The notes: a model not told the origin generated them from the sequence alone. DNA of 64,000 bases from Geosiphon pyriformis uo1 (GCA_016748015.1 JAAOMT010000749.1:1-64000), one strand, 5' to 3'; numbered from the stretch's first letter, positions 5,039 through 42,294 are shown. Made by a program: numbers and translations.

Positions 5039-7692
5039 TAATATAAACTTTAGGAAATCAAATATCGAAAGCTAGCATGATCTTGATTAAGAATGCTATA
5101 TCTCTTACAATTGACCCTGAATCGAAGAGTGGGATTTAAATGTTAGCAACTCCAAACCAAAATTACGGGGCAATTAAGAAACGGAAGGCTTATATGATCT
5201 GTTTAAGTGAATGTTTTTTTGATCTATTGAAAAAAACAGAGTTTATAAAGCACAAAATTAAAAGTACTCATTTTTGCTAGATATTTTTTAAACCCACCTA
5301 ATAGTCCTAAAATATTGATAGGTTGTGGACAGAAATTTTTCTAGCAATATATAAGGACGAATAATATCAGCTTTTCGAAAATTTATTAAATTTTGTATTT
5401 TTCATCAAAATAATCTTGGCAAGAGTGTATGTAAAATTATTATCATATTTTATAAGAGCGAACCATCAGTGAGTAAATTTTTTTTAAATTTAATGTTTCT
5501 ATTCCAAATTATAATTAATTTAAAATAATAAGTTAGATTAAACAAAGAGATTTTTACAATTTATAATTGTTAAAAAAATAACTCCCATTAAGGATAATTG
5601 AGTCTGAAAAAAATGTATTTAAAACAAAAGATTTGGTTTAAAATAATATATAGTTTTAGTTTTATTTTTATTTTTTAAGAAATTCTTGGATTTCAAGTAT
5701 TTGAATTCGTAAAAAGCTGATTAAATCATTTACAAAGCTATTTCATTTCAAAAATTTTAGGGAAACTAACCAATAATTTTTGTTTATCCAGAATTTAATT
5801 TCTAGTTTTAAAGCATTTTGATCTTCTAAAATTATTGATATCAAAAACAGAAGAAAGGGTCTTATAAAAGTGAAAATTTCACAATTTTATTTGTTCTTTT
5901 TCTGCTCTATAAATAAAATAAAATTTCTTTCAAAATTGTAAATATTTTTGAAAAATAAAAAGAAATCATCATTCAGTGAAAAAAATTTATAAAAATTTTC
6001 ACTTTTTCTGAAAGTTTATACACAAAAATAAAAATAAAAATGTTTTGAAAATCCATTTAAAAGACTTCTTTAGTAAATTAGAATTTCTCTTTTCAAATTT
6101 TGGCCAAATAAAATTTTTTGATTCAAATTTGTGAAAGTAATTTTATCATTAACACTGGTCAAAAAATAATCTAATTGAATTACTCTTTCCAGTTTTTCTA
6201 GATTTGAATGTGTCTTTTGTAAAAAGTTTATTTTATAACTACCGTGCTTAAACTTGTCAAAGATGCTTAAAGAGAGCAAAAATTAAGAATTTGAGATATT
6301 ATATTTCAACCAGATGATTTAATTTTCTCTTACAAAAATTTTTCAAGTTAATACCGAAAAATAAAGGGGCAGCTTATTACTTATTCTGCTTTAGGCAAAT
6401 AAACCAATCGAATTTGCCATCCCCAGGACTTCTCCCTTATTTAATAGTTCCTCAAGACTAAAACCTTCAATCCTGAAAGCTCAATAAAACAATAATCAAT
6501 CGTTTGCTCCTGCATTATTTGTAGAGTCCATGAATAATTGTCGGATGCAGTCATTTAACTTTTTAAGTTAAAAACAATAAATATCGCTTATAAAATCAAA
6601 CAGAGAAAAAAATTAACCATATTCACTCGCTTGTTGAATGCAACTTTTAAAATTAAATTGTGAAGCAAATTCTAAAATTGAAAGTTAGAGCAAGGAAATT
6701 ATATTAAGATAAATAACATTCGCTCTTTAGCTCTTGTTTGGGAAGCATAAGAATCTCCTTTTGTTTCTCAAATTGCCTTGCTAGAAAATTGGCATCAAAA
6801 TATTTAAATTTTTTTATTCCATATTGATTCTATTTTTGGAAAAAAGACCTGAGCCTAATTATTATAAAATTTAACACCTTTTCGCATCATAAAAGCTTTT
6901 TTAGGCACAAATGAATCAAGAATTGAAAATTTTACAAGTCATGATATTGTCCTGATTTTTAGGTAAAAAGAGCACAATTAATATCTCTTTTAAGGAAGCC
7001 ACTTGAATTTCCGGACAAAAGACTATGGCTAACTTTTTTCGGACTAAAGAATAGTAAAGCTTTGTTCTCAAGCATATATCGTAAACCAGAACAATGTCCC
7101 CTTTTCTATTCTTTATGCAGATAAAAGTGTGACTTGACGGCCAAAACCGACAAAGATTACTCGTCACACTTGCCCAAGTACGTCACACAAATGTGGTGAA
7201 AAAATAGACAAAAACTTTGTTTGTTCTTTTTCAGGTAAAAGGTATGAGATTAAAAGGCTGCAACATTTCTGCAATTCTATGCACAGCCGATTGATTATGT
7301 ATCTTCGATTGTTCAAAGTTTTAGATTTGTAACTGTTTTCACTCGGTGATTGGTATTCGGTTTTCATTCCATTCAAATTAGGTTGCTTTTAACGTTTATC
7401 GTGATTTAATTATGGCATGAGTAACTCTTAACTCAAATTCGTAAAATGAGTTTAGAATAGGAAGAAATCTTCATTGTTAGTTAAAGGGAAATCATCATAT
7501 CGTCAATAAGAATAGGGGAAAAACAATGGCAATATAACGTCATCAGCTGCCAATAACATATTTTTCATTATCAATTTTTGGGGTCCTGAAGATATAAGAA
7601 CACAATCAGTTTCTGTTTCCTTCACTATTGCGTTTCTCGCAGGTCAAAAACCTTTTTCATAGGGAATCGCACCCTTCTCTAAATCTTGCGAA

Positions 7693-8877
7693 ATGGCCGC
7701 TTTTTTGCCTGCATTGGTTTTACAACAAATTTTTCAAGAAATCGAAGAAAATCTTCCAAATAGATACCAAACCCTTTACTCCTGTATTCTTGTAAACCGC
7801 TATTGGTGTCGTAACGCAATTACATTCTTATGGCGCAGACCTTTCAATTGTAGTAGTGAAAACTTTCCCATGGTTTTAAGAACCTATTTACAATTTATCG
7901 ACAGTCAAGAATTGGAAAATTTAAATCTTGATATAAATCTTCCAGTTTTTGAAAAACCTCTCTTATTTCAATATCCTTCTTTCATCAAACACATCGACTT
8001 TGGAAATTTTATTGATGCCATCCAATCTTGGATGACAATTGACGCTGACTTCAAGAAAGGGAAAAATAGGCAAAATTGGAAACCTCAATGGTTTCATCGA
8101 GAACTTCCAATCACTCAGGAAAGGTTCTACACGATCAAACAAACTTTTTTTAATGCATTAGTCCAAAGTTTTATCCAAAATTCGGCCAGAATTCAAAGCA
8201 TTGATATGAGGTGCGATAGTCAACAGATAAAAGACAATCCTGAAGAAATCTTATGGCCTTTTGAGAAGAATGTGAGTTCCCTTGTATCCAACGTTACAAA
8301 CTTATCGGTATCTGGGATGTTTCCAAAGCAAGAGGTTTTTACAGAGCTCACCAAAGTTTGTACGAAAATTGTAAGTTTGAAATATTTTTCAAGTTAAAAA
8401 AATTTTTATATCGAAATTTTAAAGTTTTTTTTAACCTTTTTCCAAACTTAGAAAACCATGTCAATAACAATTGAAGGAAATGTTGATAATTTCGGTTTAC
8501 AAGCTGATGCCGAATATGAAAATCTTGGCTCTTTAATCGAATCCCAAAAAAGTCTTTCCAGTCTAGAACTCACATTCCGAGAAAAAAGCCGAGATTATAT
8601 CAACTTATTTCTTCCATCAATCTGGAAGAATTCAAAATCTCTTCGAAATCTTTGTTTTTACACGGCCGATTTCCGGGATATAAAATCTTTAGTAGGCTTG
8701 GCAACATGTCATCAATTGGAGTCATTGGAATTTCGATACTGTAAAGGCTTAACGCGAGAATGTGTAGTCCCATTTGCCACCGCATCGCATCCAAATCTTA
8801 AACGAGTGCGCATCTTAGGTGGGTGCTGTCAGAATCTAACGCGTTGGGCCGAAACCAAAAATAAATCGAATTATTAA
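7693..8877 (+). CDS. F-box / RNI-like leucine-rich-repeat protein (2 exons)
   Basis: N-terminal F-box-like LPALVLQQIF...LYSCILVNRYWCRNAITFLWRRPF and YPSFIKHIDF. Intron 8371-8451 (gtaagt..cttag) joins the two ORFs in frame. C-terminal LxxLxL repeats (LSSLELT, LRNLCF, LESLEFRYC). Confidence 0.88.
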
Positions 8878-33341: not shown

Positions 33342-33603
33342 ATGTCAAATGACCCGATTGCAGCAGCGTCAGCTTTAAATATAGAATTCATTGAACCCGA
33401 TCATGTTGTTGAATTGGTAAAGAATAAATCAAAAGTACCCGGTAAAGACTATTTGTTGGTAGACGTGCGAGATGAAGATTTTGAGGTGAGAAACTTTATA
33501 AAATTCAAATTTAACTTAAAATTCAATTCTATAAATAATTATGAGAGATTTTTTATCGTTGGTTTTTTTTTTGAAAAAAAAAANNNNNNNNNNNNNNNNN
33601 NNN

Positions 33604-33634
<31 letters not shown>

Positions 33635-33996
33635 AATTTCATGTTCCAAATTCTGTCAACTTTCCATCCGCTGGGCTTTCGAATTCCGTCCAAAATTTGA
33701 TAGCTGAGTATAATCAAGGTTAACAAGCTAGTAATTTTTTTTTCTCCTTTGGAAAATTATGTTTTGAAAACTTAATCTCATTTCCCTTAAAAGTTCCAGA
33801 ATTGATCTTTTACTGTGCTCTATCTCAAAAACGAGGTCCAAACTCTGCTCGAATTTACAAAGAGTCAATAAATCAAAGTGAAGTTAAAACAGATCAAAAG
33901 GTGAAAGTTATGAAAGGTGGATTCGTTGGTTGGAATGAGAAATTCGAAAATGAGAAATTCGAAAATGATACACAATTGGTAGAAAAACCTAATTAG
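33342..33996 (+). CDS. Cdc25-like rhodanese phosphatase / arsenate reductase (Acr2/Ych1/Ibp1 family), 3 exons
   Basis: DYLLVDVRDEDF, HVPNSVNFPS, active-site loop LIFYCALSQKRGP (CX5R; compare HCALSQVRGP of plant ACR2/CDC25), and VKVMKGGFVGW. The first intron spans the assembly gap. Confidence 0.88.
33584..33603. other. Assembly gap (20 N) flanked by poly(A)
   Basis: Run of N between two A homopolymers inside intron 1 of the rhodanese gene. Confidence 0.99.
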
Positions 33997-36845
33997 CTTT
34001 ACCTATCGAAGAAAATAAAATATTTCTTTTTTTTGATATGATTGATGAGTAATAAATCAAAAATGAAATCCCTTCAAACCACGTTACTAAGCATTGAGAT
34101 CACACTCTGGAAAAGAGACAATTATAAAAATTTATGAGCTAAACCAAGTGTTTTTTTACTGCTAAGAAAATCCAAATAAAATTAGGAGAAAGCTATAAAA
34201 AATAGGAATGAATTTCCTAATCCAGAGAACAATTTAGAGCTTTTAAAAATTTAATTTTTAATAAATAAAAAATTTTAAAACCTTTAATTTTGATCCAAGG
34301 AATACAAAAAGAACCATTTCTTAACCTTTAAACGCTATTGAGTTTGATTTTATATCTTGATTAAATAAATGAATTAATAAAAGTCTTGATATTAATATAA
34401 CAAGTGATACAAATAACCATTTGAAAATTTGAGTTTTGATTTACATGAGAAATTTGTAAACTATATAAAAAAGTAAATGGAAACACTTTCCTAAGTTTCA
34501 CAAAAAATCAAAAATACATGTATCAAGTTTTGTTTATCATTGTAAAAAAAAAACATTACCAGTTTTTTGTTTACCAATATATATATATATATATATATAT
34601 GTAAATTTTACAAAGATAAATATAGTTTTTAATTTGGAAATTTACCTAATATTCGAAAAATTGGTTTCATTGGAAAAAAGGAATCATCACACTCAAAAGT
34701 TAAACATGACCATTTTTATTCAAGGAAAAAATTTGTCGAATTCACTAACATCAAAAATATCAAAACTATAATTGAAATTGAGTCAGAGAAGGAAAAATTT
34801 CTAATCTTCAAGATAAAACAACAACAACAACAACAGCAACAATAAAAACAGAAAAAAAGAATTCTCATCAAAAAATTTTTATCAGCTTATAGTTCAAAAG
34901 AAATGACTTTAAGTTTTGCTCTACCTGACACAAGAATAATAATAGTGATATATGGTAAAAAGATTAAAAAAAAGTTTCCCAAATCAAAAGTTACACAAGC
35001 ATTTCAGCATGCCTTTCTTCTAGAATACTCTGTTCTAATTATCTATTTACCAGAAAATAATTTTTTATATTTGATATTAAAGATTAATTTGACTTCATTT
35101 GACCTCCTGACAAAATTTCATATAACTCTATGTACTTTTTGTGTTTTTTAATGAATCTTAAGTAGATGATATGAACTGATTACCGTATCTTACTAGGAGA
35201 TGAGTAATATTTTCAAAGATTAAAACACATGTTTAGAAATTCTCTATTGATATAATGTTTAGCATTTTTTTACCAGAATATTTCAACAGATATTTTTGAT
35301 AAGCTTCATAGCAAAAAAAAAAAAAAAAGGGCAAAATTCTCGTCTATCAAGTTATCAACGAGGATATGATATGAAGTTTAAGAAATAATATCGTTCCCAC
35401 TTTTTAATGGGGAATAAAGTTTCATACATGAGGTTAAAAATTGCGTTTTAAATACAAATAAGGATTGGTAAGGTCCATTTTGAGATTTGAGTAAATAATT
35501 TTCAGGGGAAATAAATATTAGACTTTTTTTTTGTTATCTTATATAATCTGAAGCATTACTTTGCTGCAAATTTAATGAATTCAATTCTTTCGCTTCTTAG
35601 AACGTTTTATCTCGGATCAAAAAATTGAAACACAAACTGAGTACAAGGAACCTTTTAATTGAGCTAAATCCAGTACATCCAAGAAATCTTGTTTGTATTC
35701 AAGATTTTCAATAACTTTCGAACGACAAATTGCTAAAAAATTTTCCTCATATACAAAATGAAAAATGTTTGTTGAAAGATTTACTAATAAAATATCAAGA
35801 ATATGTTCTCTTTGGTTTGAGGCTGATTGAAAATTTGAAACTCAAATGCCTGATTTCATAAATAATTTGCTGGAAAGGTATTTTTATTAATTAATATGAA
35901 AGATTTTATCATATTTTAAAGTTACTAAATTTCTTTTATTTTGAATTTTTCTTCTTATTTCTCAATTTTTAACCTAAAAGAGCTAAAAAGACCTGAAAGA
36001 ATGAAACACTACATTGATCATTATGCCTGGACCCTATAGTAATTTGTGCTAAGAAAATATTTAGCATGATAAATTCTGACGCATTTATATGAACGAAGGA
36101 ATGTGTTTCATTTCTCAGGTAGGTATCTATGACCAATATATTTTTGTTTTTGGAAATATTATTGACATTGTTCTTTTATATTTTAATGATTAGGAAACTT
36201 TAAAAATTGACAGTTTTGAATTCACGCTACTTAATCGGATCTTCGTTTGCTAAATATTGACATTAAGTGAAATTATTGCACAGACTCCTCCAGGAAAAAT
36301 CTATAATTGGCCAATTCTTCCAAATCCCGTGCTGAATCACCTGACAAATTTAAATAACAAAGTTTCACATTAAATACTTGAATTATCAACCAAATGCATA
36401 AACTTCATTATCAAAGCGGGGATGATATTTTGGTCTTGGTTCATAATTTTCTAAATCCAAACAAATAAATACGAACTATTTGTACGAGAGATATCGCACA
36501 TTTCCCTAAGAATGGATAATCAAAGATTGAACATCTCCGAAGTTTGATCGCAAATTGGAATTCCCCATAGGAATTGAGTAAACAATAAAATGGTATTTAT
36601 CAAGAGTCTTCTTTGTCATGTTCGGTTCACAGAATTTGACTTTTGTTAAAAAGGTTTCTCACAACCGGTGAAAGTTGAAATTAGCTTTCTCTTGGCGTAT
36701 TTTTGGATTTGCTTGAATTGATATCAATACCATCTAAATTTAAGAAATCAAAGGGACAGCTTAAAATTCGAGAAATAAAAGAGTTTCAAAGTAAAACTAG
36801 AATACTCAAAAGGTCATTGTTAAGCTTGAAAGTTGAAAAAAGAAT

Positions 36846-37235
36846 ATGACTTCAAAAAATACTCCCACTAAAACTAAGTCACTGTCAAAATCAACAAAAA
36901 AAGCAAATCCAACCGAACGGATCGAATTCTCATCACTGACCTCTAGCCCCTCAGACATAACACCAAAACCCACCTATACAAAAATGGCAGAAATTCAAGC
37001 AGCCCCATTAAAAAACAATATAGAAAAAGGTCTAGCAAGTGTGTTTTTGATTATTTTCATACTACTTGTATTGGTTGGAATAACGTGGGTTTATGGAAGT
37101 TGGAGACGTCGGGCTGAAGAACGTCAACGACGGATACAAATTTTAAAAGAAATCGAAGAAGAAGCTGCCTGGCACAAGCCTGGTGCTGCTATGGCAGAAA
37201 TTTTAATCGATTATTCCGACCCGGAAAGAAAATGA
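36846..37235 (+). CDS. Small single-pass membrane protein, 129 aa
   Basis: Ser/Thr/Lys-rich N-terminus, one transmembrane helix (LASVFLIIFILLVLVGITWVYGSW), then a basic stop-transfer RRR and a charged helix. Confidence 0.7.
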   Translation: MTSKNTPTKTKSLSKSTKKANPTERIEFSSLTSSPSDITPKPTYTKMAEIQAAPLKNNIEKGLASVFLIIFILLVLVGITWVYGSWRRRAEERQRRIQILKEIEEEAAWHKPGAAMAEILIDYSDPERK

Positions 37236-37490
37236 AATGTGGAACAAAAGAATTAAGAGTTTTAGCGAGAAATATTGAAATGATAAGAGATTGAGTGATT
37301 TAAATTTGTAAATAATATCAAATCATTCATATTATCATAATCTCTTAAGACTCGAGTTCTTAATTTTGGTCATATTGTAATAATAGCTTGAAATTCTGTC
37401 TCGCTTAGTTTTTCTATTCACACAGCAAGGCCGAAATATTCATTTGAATTGAAGTTTATAGAGCGTTAACTTCCCATCAAAATAGCTGAA

Positions 37491-37492
<2 letters not shown>

Positions 37493-37534
<42 letters not shown>

Positions 37535-37539
37535 TTTTT

Positions 37540-37576
<37 letters not shown>
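37493..37576. repeat. ~84-nt poly(T) tract
   Basis: Near-pure T homopolymer with two interrupting A residues. Confidence 0.95.
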
Positions 37577-37578
<2 letters not shown>

Positions 37579-37890
37579 CTTTGTAAACCTCAAACTCCAA
37601 AAAAAAAAAAACAGATTATAAAACTAAATATGTAACAATAAAATTATCCAAAGTTCATTTTAATAGTTTGAAAACAAACCAATCCATTTAATCTTACCAA
37701 TCAGGCTATATTGTTATAATTTGATTTTAGAAATATTCTAGATATTTTTAAATTTACAATTTAAGAAATTAATTTTCTGAACGATAAATTTAGGGACGAG
37801 AAGACCAAACAAGTTTTTAAAAATTTTTTAAAGTATTAAATTTTTTTATTAAAAAGAAGGGAAATAAATTTTATTTATAAATATATTTAA

Positions 37891-39466
37891 TCATATGATC
37901 TCCTCCTCGGGAATGGGTCCCAAGAACCATGAGATAACACTGCAGGCCAATAAAGCACCAGCACTAGTCCATAAACACGCATACAAGCCAACGTATTGGT
38001 ATAATAATCCACCCAAAACTAACCCAATTAATCTCCCAATCGCATTTGCCATATAGTAAAAACCAACATTCATAGCTACTTTATCGCGATGACAATAAGC
38101 TAAAATTAAAAAAGAATGAACCGAAGAATTAATGGCAAAAATGAAAGCAAAAAGAAATAAGCCTGCGATTAATAAAGCAACCAGAAGAGTGTGATCAGAG
38201 GTAATCGAGAGGAAGGTCAGTACAAATGAAACTAAAATAGTGATGATTAATAGGATCAAAGTAAAGGGAACAAGTATACGACCTGTCGTAATTGGGTATA
38301 AATGAATAGGTTTTAAAATGAGTTGTGGAGTGCTTGATTGTACAAAACCATAGAAGATTACCCAACAAGCTAAAAAAGCTCCTGTACTTATGTACGACCT
38401 AATGAAAGTGGAAAGGTAAACTTTTGAATCAAAAAAGATCAATTGTATAATAAAGATATTAGCTTACCATCCGATTGGACCTCGTAGAAATACAGGTACT
38501 GGAACTTCAAACCATAAATCGCGAGCTCCAAATAAAAACATTCTGGCCAAGGATAATATATTAACATTTCGTCCTTTGTTAAAAATTTCACGAAATGATA
38601 ATGGTTTCTTCCTTTTGCTAACAGCCAAATTTCTATCAAGAAAATACCAAGCAAAAGGAACAACAACCAAATTCATAGCCAAAAGGACTGCTAAACCGGG
38701 AATATATTTTAAATAGTTCAATAGAAATGCTCCCAAAAAAAATCCAGCTCCTTTAACGGAATTTTTTGCTCCAGTTAACCAAGCCACAGTTTTAAAAAGT
38801 GCTGTTTGGTGATCATTCTTAGATTCATCATGTGGGACAAGCTTAGTAACTGATTTACCGCCAAGTTTGATCATGTCTTTGGCCACTCCACTAAAGCCTT
38901 GAGCAATTACGATGTATATGATTGTAAGTAATCTTGACCATTCACGTTGTAGTCCACAAAGAATTGAAATCCCTATTATTTGTGCCACGAGCCCGAACAA
39001 AAGACAAAAACGAAGACCAAGACGTGATCCTAGAATCCCTCCAACCAGGTTTGTTATCACTCCCAAAAATTCGTATAAAGTAAACATCAAAGATATTTGA
39101 AGAGCCTGAAAATAAGATAATTGTTAATTATAATTTACAAAATATTAATAATAATAATTGCCATAAATTTAAATCTTTTTATGTTACATTGAAATGTCGC
39201 GTATATAACTCTAGCAAAACAATCATTCGTAGTCCAGAGTCAGTGAGGGTAAATAATAGGTATCCTCCAGCAATGATGTAAAAATTTCGCATTGACATTT
39301 TAGGATTGTGATCTTCAATCTCTAACGTTGCCACTTCTATGTGAGGATTTTGGTTAATTATTTCATAATCATTATTTGGAGATTTATCCGGAATTTGAGA
39401 AACTGATTTTTCCTTATTTTTGGGTGTTGTAGTTTGTAAAATTTTAGAAGAATCAATATTTGACAT
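37891..39466 (-). CDS. arsJ: Organoarsenical efflux MFS transporter ArsJ homologue (3 exons)
   Basis: Exons 39466-39188, 39105-38468 and 38398-37891. ArsJ family motifs in order: YLLFTLTDSGLRMIVLL, LYEFLGVITNLVGGILGSRLGL, AQGFSGVAKDMIKLGGKS, VAWLTGAKNSVKGAGFFLG, NVNILSLARMFLFGARDLWFEVPVPVFL, GAFLACWVIFYGFVQ, FAINSSVHSFLILAY, VGFYYMANAIGRLIG, GLYACLWTS. Confidence 0.92.
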
Positions 39467-40606
39467 GATGAAAGAAATCAATTTCCCTTTCTTTCTTTTT
39501 CTTTTTTTTTTTTTGAAAATGTCCAGGTAATTCGATACGTTTTATACCGAATTAATTGAAGTTTTGTTTACTTTTGTTAAATTGAGACAACAAACAAACT
39601 ATGCGCCAATGCCAGTAACTTTTGACTAGAAAATAAGTATTTTGACCGTTCATAAAATTTTTTGAATTAAAAATTCCTTTAAAGATCCAATCACATTTGC
39701 AGGAAGTTCGCTGTACGAATTAAAAATTTGTAATTTTTTACAGCAAATCATACCGTCATTCTCTTATCCTAAATGGTTTGCTAATTAAAAATTCAAAAGT
39801 CATTTTCACCCAATCGGAAATATTGGTTTCTTTTTGTCATTATCCAAAAAAAAAAGGGGAATATTAAAGGGTTTATATGATCATTTGGTATGAATCTTTT
39901 TGATTGAGGCTCATAATTTGTAATATTATTTGAGAATTTTAAAAGAGTAAAGTTAAACTTTCATCAGGAGGCTGAAAATCTTTAAATCAGTAAAAAAGGG
40001 TTTATTACAAATTAGTCTTGTGACAATTAAAAATTCAAGCACCAAGCCCTTTTAAGCCTCGATAATTTTGGTCTATTTAAAAGAGCCTCAAAAATTTTTC
40101 GTATTAGAAAGGATAAGGCTGCGGAAAAATCAAGTGATAATTCACATCTCGTAAAGCTTTCTACGCTTTTGGCGTAACTCTTGATACCATTTGCTTCCGT
40201 CAGAACAAACCCTCTCAAATATTTTCAAGGTATTTATTTCATATGATAACATAGTAATTGTCACAAATTCTAACCCTTTATTGGCGTTGACACATTTTCT
40301 AAAAGAGGCCAAAAATCTGAATATGTTTATTATCTTTATTTTTTTTTCAAGATCTGTTAATGGAACTGAATTCAACAGTATTCTTATATCAGAAATTTCT
40401 CACTATTTCCAAATCTCTGGGAGCTTAATTACCCAGTGGTGGGAATTCGTCGGAAATCATTTTTTTTAAAAAAAACTAGCAATTTTTATTTTCACTTGGA
40501 TTTGAGACACGGAAATGTTGCCGAATCATTAACTAATTTAAATGTGACACATTTTTTAAAAAAAGGCTGATAATCCTATTGAAAAATCTCATATAGCTTT
40601 AATCTA

Positions 40607-42294
40607 CAGTCAGACCTCCATAAAAGAGCCCTCGATAAAAGAACAACCTCTTACAAAAGAACATTTTTTTATAGAACCAATTGATTAATTAACAATTTTC
40701 CCTTTATATAAGAAAAATCTATAAAGGAACAAGAACATAATTTTATCAAACGTTTATTCGAAATTTACCTTCATATAAGAATAAAAACAAAAACGAGTAG
40801 CAGTTAATAATGCTCTTCGTAAAGAAATTTGTCAATATTCCAAAAATCACTATGGCATGAAACATGATAATATTGTAGCTTACTTCAATAATAAATATCC
40901 AGAACTTCATATTTCTCGTCCAACTGTCTCCAAGATAATCAAAGAGCATGCAAAGTGGTTGAATATTGAAATTGATGAAATCTCAGAAAGATCTATTCGA
41001 CACAAAAGCGTTAAATTACCATTATTAGACCAAGCTTTAAGTTATTGGATAGAACAAGTAACTGCAGCCACTATCAAATTCAATGATCAACTAATTAAAG
41101 AGAAAGGAAAAGAATTTGCCAAACTTCTTGGTATGCACGAAAATGAAATACAATTCTCAAATGGATGGGTTCAAAAATTCAAAAAACAAAACCAGTTACG
41201 TGTTTACTGATTTCATGGTGAAGCAGGAAGTGTATCAACTGAAAGTTTACTAAAAGAACGAAGAAAATTAAAAACCATTATATCCGAATTTGATCCTGCT
41301 GACATATATAATGCTGATGAAACAGAATTATTTTTTCATATGGGACCAAATCAAACATTTGCAAATGCAGGAAAAAAATTGGTATATTATATTTACCAAT
41401 TGTTATCGTTATATATTATTGTTATATTAAATTAATTGGGTTTTTTATAGGATAAATCTCAGATTACAATTCTTGCTACAAATTCAACTGGATCTCACAA
41501 ATTGCAACCTTTAGTAATTGGACATGCAAAAAATCCAAGATGCTTTAAAGGAATTAATACTTCCAACCTACCTGTAATTTACAAATTCAATTTCAAAGCA
41601 TAGATGCACTCAGATATATGGAAAACATGACTCAAATATATAAATAAAGACTTTCGAATTCAAAATCAGCATATATTACTTTTGATTAATAATACAACTT
41701 TTCATCATACTCAAATCGAGGAAGATTTATTTCAATTGACCAATATTACTTTGCACTATTTTTCTCCAAAATAAATTAAACATAAAACAAACAATTGATT
41801 ATATTGTTCAATTATGGTTTCAAGTAACACCTGTTACAATTCAAAACTGTTGGCAAAAAATGGATATTCTTTTCTATAATCAAGAATTAGAAATTCAAGA
41901 ATCCGAAACATCAATTGCTATAGATATATTCAACAATTTACCATCAAATGCACAACAATTGGTCAAAAATCTCGAAGATTATACTGTAGCAGTTGATAAA
42001 TTATTGGCAACTGAAAATATTCTTGATGATAATGAAATTGTAGATATGGTTTTACCCGATGCTCAAATTGAAACCAATACAATTAATGACTCGGAAGAAG
42101 AATTAGAAGAATCTTCACCTGCTATAATTACAATTACAGAGCATATGAAGCATTAAAAAAGGTAATTAGATTTGAAGAGCAATTAGCAGAAGAAAATTTT
42201 AGTATAGAAAACCAAAATTTACTTAGAAAAAAATTATATGAATACGAAAAAATGAAGGAAAATTCTAAAAAACAGGTAACAATTAATCAATATT

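What the first reader, a model, noticed from the sequence alone, without database searches (positions are those of the whole stretch)
33342..39466. Candidate fungal arsenate-detoxification locus: intron-containing ArsJ next to an Acr2-type arsenate reductase
Seen: a spliced ArsJ-family MFS gene and a Cdc25/rhodanese gene with an Acr2-family active site (CALSQKR) lie convergently about 3.9 kb apart, with only one small membrane-protein gene between them. Established: bacterial ArsJ exports 1-arseno-3-phosphoglycerate made by GAPDH, a route for As(V) extrusion. Known fungal clusters instead pair Acr2 (As(V) to As(III)) with the Acr3 arsenite pump. Inference: this locus combines a bacterial-type As(V)-ester efflux route with a eukaryotic reductase. 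That would suit a fungus that scavenges phosphate and so takes up arsenate. No GAPDH or Acr3 gene is in the window, so housekeeping GAPDH would have to supply the substrate. I do not know of this pairing being described in fungi, but I cannot search to confirm.
Basis: partly seen in the sequence, partly recalled or inferred. Interest (0 to 1): 0.88.

Follow-up and report, generated by a model that had tools for sequence, protein, structure and literature searches.

The report
Fungal ArsJ gene beside Cdc25-like rhodanese
Both genes are real: a fungal version of the bacterial arsenate-ester exporter ArsJ, and a small Cdc25/Acr2-like enzyme gene 3.9 kb away. ArsJ is an old gene shared by all arbuscular-mycorrhizal-type fungi sampled, but no sampled relative has the two genes side by side, so a dedicated arsenic locus is not supported.

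Summary
The window matches Geosiphon pyriformis: public proteins G9A89_002126 and G9A89_002128 equal the exon translations.

- **ArsJ-like gene:** three exons on the minus strand (37891-39466). It encodes a 474-aa MFS protein that scores 412.8 bits on NCBIfam ArsJ (cut-off 400).
- **Rhodanese gene:** three exons on the plus strand (33342-33996). It encodes a 143-aa Cdc25/Ych1/Acr2-like protein.
- **Assembly gap:** it lies inside intron 1 and removes no coding sequence.

- ArsJ is vertically inherited. It occurs in 15 Glomeromycotina, chytrids and Blastocladiales, and groups apart from bacteria.
- No rhodanese lies within the DNA held around ArsJ (2-10 kb a side) in seven other Glomeromycotina species. 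This includes Ambispora, whose rhodanese orthologue sits on another contig.
- The two genes converge, with a gene between them, and their upstream regions share no word beyond chance.
- The active site reads YC(X5)R, not the defining HC(X5)R. A second, more Ych1-like copy lies on another contig.
- No Acr3, ArsB or dedicated GAPDH was detected in this genome.

Most likely these are two independent neighbours. ArsJ probably exports the arsenate ester made by housekeeping GAPDH. I rate this a new member of a known kind, of modest interest.

The parts
33342..33485 (+). Rhodanese gene, exon 1 (48 codons, phase 0 end, donor GT at 33486)
   Evidence: Identical to residues 1-48 of P0267.
33486..33633 (+). 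Rhodanese intron 1, which holds the assembly gap 33584-33603 inside an A-run. True length unknown.
   Evidence: The Ambispora orthologue aligns ungapped over the junction. The paralogue has the same exon structure.
33634..33718 (+). Rhodanese gene, exon 2 (85 nt, 28 codons plus 1 nt)
   Evidence: Residues 49-76 of P0267. The paralogue on C531 has an exon of the same length.
33794..33996 (+). Rhodanese gene, exon 3 with the stop codon. It carries the active-site loop Y-C-A-L-S-Q-K-R-G.
   Evidence: Pfam Rhodanese. P0267.
36846..37235 (+). Intervening 129-aa ORF with one predicted membrane span. No recognisable family.
   Evidence: No Pfam or NCBIfam family. Atlas recognition is below threshold. 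The public locus tags 002126 and 002128 leave room for one gene.
37891..38398 (-). ArsJ-like gene, exon 3 with the stop codon (matches ArsJ profile positions 240-390)
   Evidence: P0154.
38468..39105 (-). ArsJ-like gene, exon 2 (638 nt, matches ArsJ profile positions 35-238)
   Evidence: 213 of 214 residues identical to P0154.
39188..39466 (-). ArsJ-like gene, exon 1 (93 codons). It has a roughly 59-residue N-terminal extension that lies outside the match to the bacterial-derived ArsJ profile, then the first membrane span.
   Evidence: In P0154 the profile match starts at residue 60.
39664..40035 (-). Four copies of AATTTTTAATTC (read in the gene's sense) upstream of the ArsJ start codon. Two are exact (39664-39675, 39717-39728). 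Two have one mismatch (39782-39793, 40024-40035). This is a candidate cis-element.
   Evidence: The word is enriched upstream of ArsJ in other Glomeromycotina. No copy lies within 1.3 kb upstream of the rhodanese.

Best explanation
These are two genuine, independently evolving fungal genes that happen to be neighbours in the Geosiphon lineage.

Gene 1 (37891-39466, minus strand) is the Geosiphon orthologue of a fungal ArsJ lineage. That lineage has been inherited vertically in Glomeromycotina, Chytridiomycota and Blastocladiomycota. Inferred mechanism: arsenate enters through phosphate transporters. Housekeeping GAPDH (single locus on contig C645) arsenylates glyceraldehyde-3-phosphate to 1-arseno-3-phosphoglycerate. 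The MFS permease exports that ester, which then hydrolyses outside the cell. This route needs no reduction step. It would be the only dedicated arsenic exporter detectable in this genome.

Gene 2 (33342-33996, plus strand) is the more divergent of two Cdc25/Ych1-like single-domain rhodanese paralogues. It has a YC(X5)R loop. So far I have seen it only in Archaeosporales (Geosiphon and Ambispora). Whether its substrate is a phosphoprotein or phosphoester, or arsenate, is unknown.

What is shown: gene structures, family membership, phylogeny, lack of conserved linkage, and absence of Acr3 and ArsB matches. What is inferred: the transport substrate, the use of housekeeping GAPDH, and the lack of co-regulation.
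For: - **ArsJ identity:** 412.8 bits against a cut-off of 400, covering profile positions 1-390 of 392. The exons are colinear on the profile.
- **Single copy** in the 128-Mb assembly.
- **Orthologues** in 15 Glomeromycotina species, eight Spizellomycetales/Rhizophlyctidales chytrids, Gonapodya, Blastocladiella and Allomyces.
- **Tree:** bacteria are split from eukaryotes (SH-aLRT 100). Fungi form one group (95), Glomeromycotina one group (99), and Geosiphon groups with Ambispora (99).
- **Intron positions** are shared with other Glomeromycotina.
- **Function in a eukaryote:** the Chlamydomonas arsJ mutant is arsenate-sensitive (PMC7826186).
- **No conserved linkage** to a rhodanese in seven other Glomeromycotina species. 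The positive control (paralogue L006) was found by the same tblastn.
- **No flanking gene of any relative's locus** recurs in the 64-kb window.
- **Layout:** convergent, with an intervening ORF.
- **Promoters** share no word beyond chance.
- **The ArsJ-upstream 12-mer** is absent upstream of the rhodanese.
- **The C531 paralogue** matches Ych1 better than the window gene does (E 6.5e-9 against 2e-5).
- **Weak link between motif and function:** HCX5R plant ACR2 proteins do not affect arsenic metabolism in planta (PMC3412857, PMC4251824). The reference list of PMC3422283 cites arsenate-reductase activity of human Cdc25 as 'adventitious'.
Against: - A priori the adjacency is improbable (about 1.6e-4 for a rhodanese within 5 kb of ArsJ).
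- Arsenic genes are one of the few non-metabolite gene sets known to cluster in fungi (yeast ARR1-3).
- Bacterial gapdh-arsJ pairs sit inside ars operons (PMC6205960), so a reductase near ArsJ has precedent.
- Yeast Acr2 is, from my own knowledge, itself a diverged duplicate of Ych1. That parallels the diverged YC(X5)R copy here.
- The Ambispora contigs are short (9-14 kb), so looser linkage there is not excluded.
- No expression data could be obtained.
Confidence: 0.6

Rival explanations
1. One reading: a lineage-specific two-route arsenate island. The diverged rhodanese copy has become an arsenate reductase, as yeast Acr2 did. It was brought next to ArsJ so that As(V) is both exported as the GAPDH-made ester and reduced. 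The As(III) would leave through aquaglyceroporins or be sequestered.
For: - Low chance probability of the adjacency (my arithmetic).
- C(X5)R loop nearly identical to that of Arabidopsis ACR2/CDC25.
- Sequence match to the Leishmania Sb(V)-As(V) reductase 2j6p.
- The window copy is the diverged paralogue, while a canonical HC(X5)R copy exists elsewhere.
- No Acr3 or ArsB was detected, but MIP channels are present at five places on four other contigs.
Against: - The pair is not conserved in any of seven other Glomeromycotina species, including the orthologue pair in Ambispora.
- Convergent layout with an intervening gene.
- No shared upstream word, and the ArsJ-upstream element is missing from the rhodanese.
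- The His of HC(X)5R is replaced by Tyr.
- The two routes are parallel, not sequential, so there is no toxic intermediate to select for linkage.
- The motif alone does not predict an in-vivo reductase role (PMC3412857, PMC4251824).
Confidence: 0.2
2. The fungal ArsJ-like permease has a native substrate other than the arsenate ester, for example a phosphorylated three-carbon acid or another organic anion. In that case neither gene is an arsenic gene in this organism.
For: - No dedicated GAPDH or PGK lies next to it in any of nine fungal loci inspected, unlike in bacteria and green algae (PMC7826186).
- Several fungal and algal orthologues score below the NCBIfam equivalog cut-off: R. irregularis 368.6, R. 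clarus 364.3 and Chlamydomonas 380.
- The gene is kept across fungi of many habitats.
Against: - The Geosiphon and Powellomyces proteins pass the equivalog cut-off.
- The Chlamydomonas orthologue scores lower, yet its mutant is arsenate-sensitive (PMC7826186).
- Any GAPDH can arsenylate its substrate (established enzymology, from my own knowledge).
Confidence: 0.15
3. Artefact: a misjoin at the assembly gap, or contamination from the cyanobacterial or bacterial partners of Geosiphon.
For: A 20-N gap lies inside the rhodanese gene region.
Against: - Both genes have GT-AG introns at positions shared with fungal relatives.
- The G+C content is about 30%, like the flanks.
- The exons on both sides of the gap make one protein colinear with the Ambispora orthologue.
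- The ArsJ protein groups inside Glomeromycotina, far from bacteria.
Confidence: 0.02

Closest known systems
Bacterial gapdh-arsJ pair (Pseudomonas aeruginosa DK2 ars operon; Chen et al. 2016, as described in PMC6205960 and PMC12860867)
   Same: Same protein family at equivalog level: 412.8 bits, with full-length colinear coverage. The presumed export of 1-arseno-3-phosphoglycerate is also the same. It is the only known route that extrudes pentavalent arsenic.
   Different: - The fungal gene has two spliceosomal introns and an N-terminal extension of about 59 residues.
- It has no adjacent dedicated GAPDH and no ArsR-type operon context.
- It groups with eukaryotic sequences, apart from bacteria.
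Green-algal ArsJ-GAPDH3-PGK3/4 neighbourhood (Foflonker and Blaby-Haas, PMC7826186)
   Same: A eukaryotic, intron-bearing ArsJ orthologue. The Chlamydomonas protein is in the same eukaryotic part of the tree, and its mutant is arsenate-sensitive.
   Different: In algae the transporter is conserved next to a bacterial-like GAPDH and a PGK-like gene. In nine fungal loci neither is adjacent, and Geosiphon has one GAPDH locus on another contig.
Yeast ARR1-ARR2(ACR2)-ARR3(ACR3) arsenic cluster
   Same: A Cdc25-like rhodanese sits near an arsenic exporter, and the rhodanese is a diverged copy beside a more canonical Ych1-like paralogue.
   Different: - From my own knowledge, the yeast ARR genes lie directly side by side under the bZIP regulator encoded by ARR1.
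- The yeast partner is the As(III) pump Acr3. Here the partner is an As(V)-ester exporter.
- Here the genes converge with a gene between them, and no Acr3 exists in the genome.
- The His of HC(X)5R is Tyr.
- The linkage is not conserved in relatives.
Ych1 (YGR203W) / Arabidopsis CDC25-ACR2 / Leishmania LmACR2 small Cdc25-like rhodanese proteins
   Same: Single rhodanese domain of about 140 residues with a seven-residue C(X5)R loop followed by G-P. Direct sequence matches to 1t3k, 3f4a and 2j6p.
   Different: - Tyr replaces the conserved His before the catalytic Cys, in both Geosiphon and Ambispora.
- It matches Ych1 less well than the second Geosiphon paralogue does.
- Its activity is untested.

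Membership tests
ArsJ (NCBIfam NF033734, organoarsenical efflux MFS transporter) | Whole-protein score above the curated equivalog cut-off, with full-length colinear match | tested here: met
   P0154 scores 412.8 bits against a cut-off of 400, with residues 60-463 on profile positions 1-390 of 392. The three exons match positions 1-32, 35-238 and 240-390.
ArsJ (NCBIfam NF033734, organoarsenical efflux MFS transporter) | Major facilitator superfamily architecture | tested here: met
   Exons 2 and 3 match Pfam MFS_1 (30.4 bits, just under the 33.4-bit whole-protein cut-off, and 35.0 bits). PF07690 is precomputed for the whole protein and all its orthologues.
ArsJ (NCBIfam NF033734, organoarsenical efflux MFS transporter) | Genomic pairing with a dedicated GAPDH gene (bacteria, green algae) | tested here: not met
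   There is no GAPDH in the window. The only GAPDH locus of the assembly is on contig C645. No GAPDH or PGK gene is called within the flanks held (up to 10 kb a side) in nine fungal ArsJ loci. This is a contextual feature, not a requirement of the protein family.
ArsJ (NCBIfam NF033734, organoarsenical efflux MFS transporter) | Confers As(V) but not As(III) resistance by exporting 1-arseno-3-phosphoglycerate | not testable with these tools
   This needs expression in ars-deleted E. coli or yeast, with transport assays. The only eukaryotic evidence is the Chlamydomonas mutant (PMC7826186).
Acr2-type arsenate reductase (Cdc25/rhodanese fold) | Single rhodanese/Cdc25-like domain | tested here: met
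   Pfam Rhodanese scores 46.5 bits. Sequence matches are 1t3k (1.7e-8), 3f4a (1.4e-6), 2j6p (1.9e-5) and Cdc25B (3.5e-4).
Acr2-type arsenate reductase (Cdc25/rhodanese fold) | HC(X)5R active-site motif (PMC4251824) | tested here: not met
   Cys, the five-residue spacer and Arg are present (C-A-L-S-Q-K-R). The His is Tyr in Geosiphon (F-Y-C) and in the Ambispora orthologue. The paralogue on C531 keeps F-H-C.
Acr2-type arsenate reductase (Cdc25/rhodanese fold) | Orthology to S. cerevisiae Acr2 rather than to Ych1/Ibp1-like phosphatases | not tested
The word-index searches returned only Ambispora. By my own knowledge Acr2 and Ych1 are a yeast-lineage duplication, so one-to-one orthology is not expected.
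Acr2-type arsenate reductase (Cdc25/rhodanese fold) | Functional and genomic partnership with an arsenite pump (Acr3) | tested here: not met
   No match to TIGR00832 (acr3), PF01758 (SBF) or PF02040 (ArsB) in the 128-Mb assembly. A missing match in a draft assembly is not proof of absence.
Acr2-type arsenate reductase (Cdc25/rhodanese fold) | Glutathione/glutaredoxin-dependent arsenate reduction | not testable with these tools
   This needs an enzyme assay.
Conserved fungal arsenic gene cluster | Linkage of the member genes kept in related species | tested here: not met
   tblastn of the three rhodanese exons and tblastx of whole loci found no rhodanese in the DNA held around ArsJ (2-10 kb a side, limited by contig ends) in seven other Glomeromycotina species. 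The Ambispora orthologue lies on another contig.

The most novel reading that the evidence does not exclude
In the Geosiphon lineage a diverged YC(X5)R copy of the Ych1-like rhodanese has been recruited as an arsenate reductase and placed next to ArsJ. This would be an independent replay of how yeast built its ACR2 cluster. It would give a fungus without Acr3 or ArsB a combined system: As(V)-ester export plus reduction. More broadly, ArsJ would be the main arsenic exporter of arbuscular-mycorrhizal-type fungi, under a conserved upstream element (AATTTTTAATTC).
Probability: 0.12. Interest if true: 0.6.

Novelty: new member of a known kind. Interest (0 to 1): 0.3.

Why it matters
Arbuscular-mycorrhizal-type fungi take up arsenate through their phosphate transporters, and they change how much arsenic their plant partners tolerate. 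The current textbook model for them is reduction, then arsenite efflux (ArsB/ArsA-like), plus methylation (PMC8879560). That model does not mention ArsJ.

This work shows that every sampled Glomeromycotina genome carries one vertically inherited ArsJ orthologue. It also shows that Geosiphon has no detectable Acr3 or ArsB. Together these give a concrete, testable candidate for direct As(V) export in these fungi. That is the useful residue of the finding.

The specific claim of a new ArsJ plus Acr2 locus would only matter if co-induction and reductase activity were shown. The comparative evidence here speaks against it.

Tried and rejected
- **RNA evidence.** The look-up of sequencing runs found no RNA run. 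So there is no read support for splicing, for expression or for the gap. I sent those places to no search tool afterwards, and I masked them in the local comparison.
- **Joining exons.** Searches were made exon by exon, by reference. The full-length steps used the public proteins P0154 and P0267, which the searches returned and which equal the exon translations.
- **Homology searches for the rhodanese.** The word index returned only the gene's own product and one Ambispora orthologue. The wider spread of the YC(X5)R copy therefore remains unknown.
- **Metagenome scan with the ArsJ protein.** Nearly all 80 loci are relatives at about 40-50% identity, probably bacterial or algal. The one close relative (L017, 72%) is only 1.6 kb long and has no context.
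- **ArsM lead.** The methyltransferase 7 kb downstream of ArsJ in R. irregularis and G. cerebriforme looks LaeA/UMTA-like by eye, not ArsM-like. I dropped this lead without a family scan.
- **Aquaporin lead.** An MIP gene lies next to ArsJ in both Ambispora species. In Geosiphon the MIP genes lie on other contigs.
- **Shared promoter words** between the two genes: none beyond shuffled controls.
- **Careful tree.** The careful maximum-likelihood tree did not finish in two runs. I report the quick IQ-TREE tree (SH-aLRT only). It holds 42 named eukaryotic rows and 10 short (399-426 aa) rows taken as bacterial, of which only two carry a bacterial name in their cluster. Unnamed metagenomic rows were left out.
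- **Paper not held.** PMC4992400 (Chen et al. 2016) is not held, so ArsJ biochemistry is cited through PMC6205960, PMC7826186 and PMC12860867.

Full report
**What is there**

The window is AT-rich, at about 30% G+C. It is part of contig C412 of a 128.3-Mb assembly in 792 contigs. Two public proteins named Geosiphon pyriformis equal the exon translations of the two genes in question. They are G9A89_002128 (P0154, 474 aa) and G9A89_002126 (P0267, 143 aa). The window therefore comes from that fungus or from a near-identical assembly.

**The ArsJ-like gene**

- It lies on the minus strand, with CDS exons 39188-39466, 38468-39105 and 37891-38398.
- The introns are GT-AG, 82 and 69 nt long. The exons sum to 474 codons plus a stop.
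- Exon by exon, they match NCBIfam NF033734 (MFS_ArsJ) colinearly, at profile positions 1-32, 35-238 and 240-390 of 392.
- The whole public protein scores 412.8 bits against a curated equivalog cut-off of 400.
- It is the only such gene in the assembly.

The full-length steps used the public proteins that the searches returned.

**The rhodanese gene and the gap**

- The gene lies on the plus strand, with exons 33342-33485, 33634-33718 and 33794-33996. These sum to 143 codons plus a stop.
- The 20-N gap (33584-33603) sits in an A-run inside intron 1.

Three results show that no coding sequence is lost.
- The exon translations equal P0267.
- The Ambispora gerdemannii orthologue P0268 (68% identity) aligns without a gap across both junctions.
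- The paralogue on contig C531 has the same 85-nt second exon and the same intron phases.

The protein is a single rhodanese domain (Pfam, 46.5 bits). By sequence it is closest to four solved structures:
- Arabidopsis CDC25/ACR2 (1t3k, E 1.7e-8)
- yeast Ych1 (3f4a, E 1.4e-6)
- the Leishmania Sb(V)-As(V) reductase (2j6p, E 1.9e-5)
- human Cdc25B

The loop is C-A-L-S-Q-K-R, followed by G-P. The residue before the Cys is Tyr, not the His of the defining HC(X)5R motif (PMC4251824). Ambispora also has Tyr there. The second Geosiphon copy keeps His and matches Ych1 more strongly (E 6.5e-9 against 2e-5 for the same exon). The window gene is therefore the more diverged of two paralogues.

**Layout**

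- The two stop codons face each other across 3894 bp.
- A 129-aa single-span ORF without any family (36846-37235) lies between them.
- The other neighbours are a kinase with a Sel1 repeat, an arrestin-domain gene, a Tc5-type transposase remnant and a class-3 lipase. None is arsenic-related.

**Where ArsJ comes from**

An exhaustive profile search with exon 2 found 967 representative proteins. The closest named ones are from Acaulospora, a dictyostelid, Gonapodya, a pedinophyte alga, a hemichordate and Allomyces.

A profile search then listed full-length orthologues in the following groups:
- 15 Glomeromycotina species. The one from R. clarus is already named ArsJ by NCBI.
- Many Spizellomycetales chytrids, and Blastocladiella.
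- Hemichordates.
- Green, red and brown algae, a haptophyte and a diatom.

In a quick maximum-likelihood tree:
- the ten short rows taken as bacterial (two of them named) are split from all eukaryotes (SH-aLRT 100);
- the 26 fungal rows form one group (95);
- Glomeromycotina form one group (99);
- Geosiphon joins the two Ambispora species (99), as in the species tree.

Exon boundaries coincide across Glomeromycotina loci. The gene is an old, vertically inherited fungal gene. It is not a recent bacterial import and not contamination.

**Is the pairing meaningful?**

For the pairing:
- By chance, one of the two rhodanese genes would fall within 5 kb of the single ArsJ gene with probability of about 1.6e-4.
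- Arsenic genes do cluster in yeast.
- Bacterial gapdh-arsJ pairs lie in ars operons (PMC6205960).

Against the pairing:
- I fetched the ArsJ locus with up to 10 kb on each side from R. irregularis (two strains), G. cerebriforme, D. epigaea, P. brasilianum, G. margarita, A. gerdemannii and A. leptoticha, and from the chytrid Powellomyces.
- Neither the gene calls nor tblastn with the three rhodanese exons nor tblastx of whole loci found a rhodanese there. The same search did find the Geosiphon paralogue, used as a control.
- In A. gerdemannii the orthologue of the window's rhodanese lies beside an Argonaute gene on a different contig. Given the contig ends, any linkage there would exceed about 14 kb.
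- No flanking gene of any relative's locus recurs in the 64-kb window, so local gene order has been scrambled throughout.
- The two genes converge with a gene between them, so they share no promoter.
- Their upstream regions share no word longer than shuffled controls give.

**A possible control element for ArsJ**

While comparing promoters I found the word AATTTTTAATTC.
- In Geosiphon it occurs four times between -209 and -569 of the ArsJ start (two exact copies, two with one mismatch).
- It recurs upstream of ArsJ in both Ambispora species, R. irregularis and G. cerebriforme. With one mismatch it also recurs in D. epigaea and G. margarita.
- Eight of 11 exact matches in about 199 kb of Glomeromycotina sequence fall in the 5.2% that lies within 1.3 kb upstream of ArsJ (binomial p 8e-9).
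- The word was found from the Archaeosporales loci, so only the Glomeraceae hits are independent. They are three exact copies in 2.6 kb.
- No copy, even with one mismatch, lies within 1.3 kb upstream of the Geosiphon rhodanese.

**Rest of the pathway**

- The assembly has no match to Acr3 (TIGR00832), SBF (PF01758) or ArsB (PF02040).
- It has one GAPDH locus, on contig C645.
- It has MIP channel matches at five places on four other contigs.

ArsJ is thus the only dedicated arsenic exporter I can detect, and it would have to use housekeeping GAPDH. Reduction is not a step of the ArsJ route. The two activities would run in parallel, so no toxic intermediate would favour linkage.

The HCX5R motif is also a poor predictor of an in-vivo reductase role. 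Plant ACR2 knock-outs show unchanged arsenic speciation (PMC3412857, PMC4251824). Cdc25 catalytic domains reduce arsenate 'adventitiously', according to a title cited in PMC3422283.

**Literature**

- Eukaryotic ArsJ has been described in green algae, next to GAPDH3 and PGK3/4, and the Chlamydomonas mutant is arsenate-sensitive (PMC7826186).
- I found no paper that mentions ArsJ in Glomeromycota or other fungi.
- A recent fungal arsenic paper still calls ArsJ a bacterial family (PMC12860867).
- The current model for mycorrhizal fungi omits ArsJ (PMC8879560).

**Verdict**

The proposed ArsJ plus Acr2 detoxification locus is not supported by comparative evidence. It is most likely a lineage-specific coincidence (0.6). 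The functional-island reading keeps about 0.2.

The finding is a new member of a known kind. Two by-products are worth a follow-up: the conservation of ArsJ throughout Glomeromycotina, and its candidate upstream element.

An earlier first-stage note of this scan (s1-505780) had already flagged the same ArsJ gene on this same stretch.

Noticed in passing
window 39664-40035 (upstream of ArsJ); also L011 1506-1517 and 2385-2396, L012 5099-5110, L007 8898-8909 and 9034-9045, L016 9711-9722: The 12-mer AATTTTTAATTC (read in the gene's sense; in R. irregularis both copies are inverted) recurs upstream of ArsJ in Geosiphon (four copies, counting one-mismatch forms), both Ambispora species, R. irregularis and G. 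cerebriforme. Eight of 11 exact matches lie in 5.2% of the sequence (p 8e-9). This is a candidate conserved cis-element. The word was discovered on part of the same data.
   Followed up: partly
L011 79-410 and 2805-4369; L012 1350-3033 and 5272-6890: In both Ambispora species ArsJ is divergently adjacent to an MIP (aquaporin-family) gene. In A. gerdemannii a bZIP gene lies downstream (6351-8258). Aquaglyceroporins conduct arsenite in other systems. In Geosiphon the MIP genes are on other contigs.
   Followed up: partly
L007 and L016, about 7-9 kb downstream of ArsJ: Glomeraceae keep the order Mrp51, zinc-finger gene, ArsJ, methyltransferase (Methyltransf_23/31/11). The methyltransferase looks LaeA/UMTA-like by eye rather than ArsM-like. 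This was not scanned against families.
   Followed up: no
G000 contig C531, 335.3-335.96 kb (L006 1078-1683): This is a second Cdc25/Ych1-like rhodanese gene with a canonical F-H-C-T-F-S-Q-V-R-G loop and the same three-exon structure. It matches yeast Ych1 better than the window's copy does.
   Followed up: partly
tree (P0183, P0184, P0009): ArsJ homologues of three hemichordates (Saccoglossus, Glandiceps, Ptychodera) form a tight group inside the algal part of the tree. This may reflect an old transfer into that animal lineage, or patchy retention.
   Followed up: no
window 40857-41210: A Tc5/pogo-type transposase DNA-binding domain remnant (HTH_Tnp_Tc5, 44.6 bits) lies 1.4 kb upstream of ArsJ. 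This fits local rearrangement.
   Followed up: no
window 37495-37578, 34575-34602 and 34820-34843: Three simple repeats lie in the spacer between the two genes: a T-run of about 80 nt with a few interruptions, a (TA)n tract and a (CAA)n tract. The spacer is only about 24% G+C between 34 and 36 kb.
   Followed up: no
Nothing was laid. I sent these letters to no search tool afterwards.
   Followed up: no
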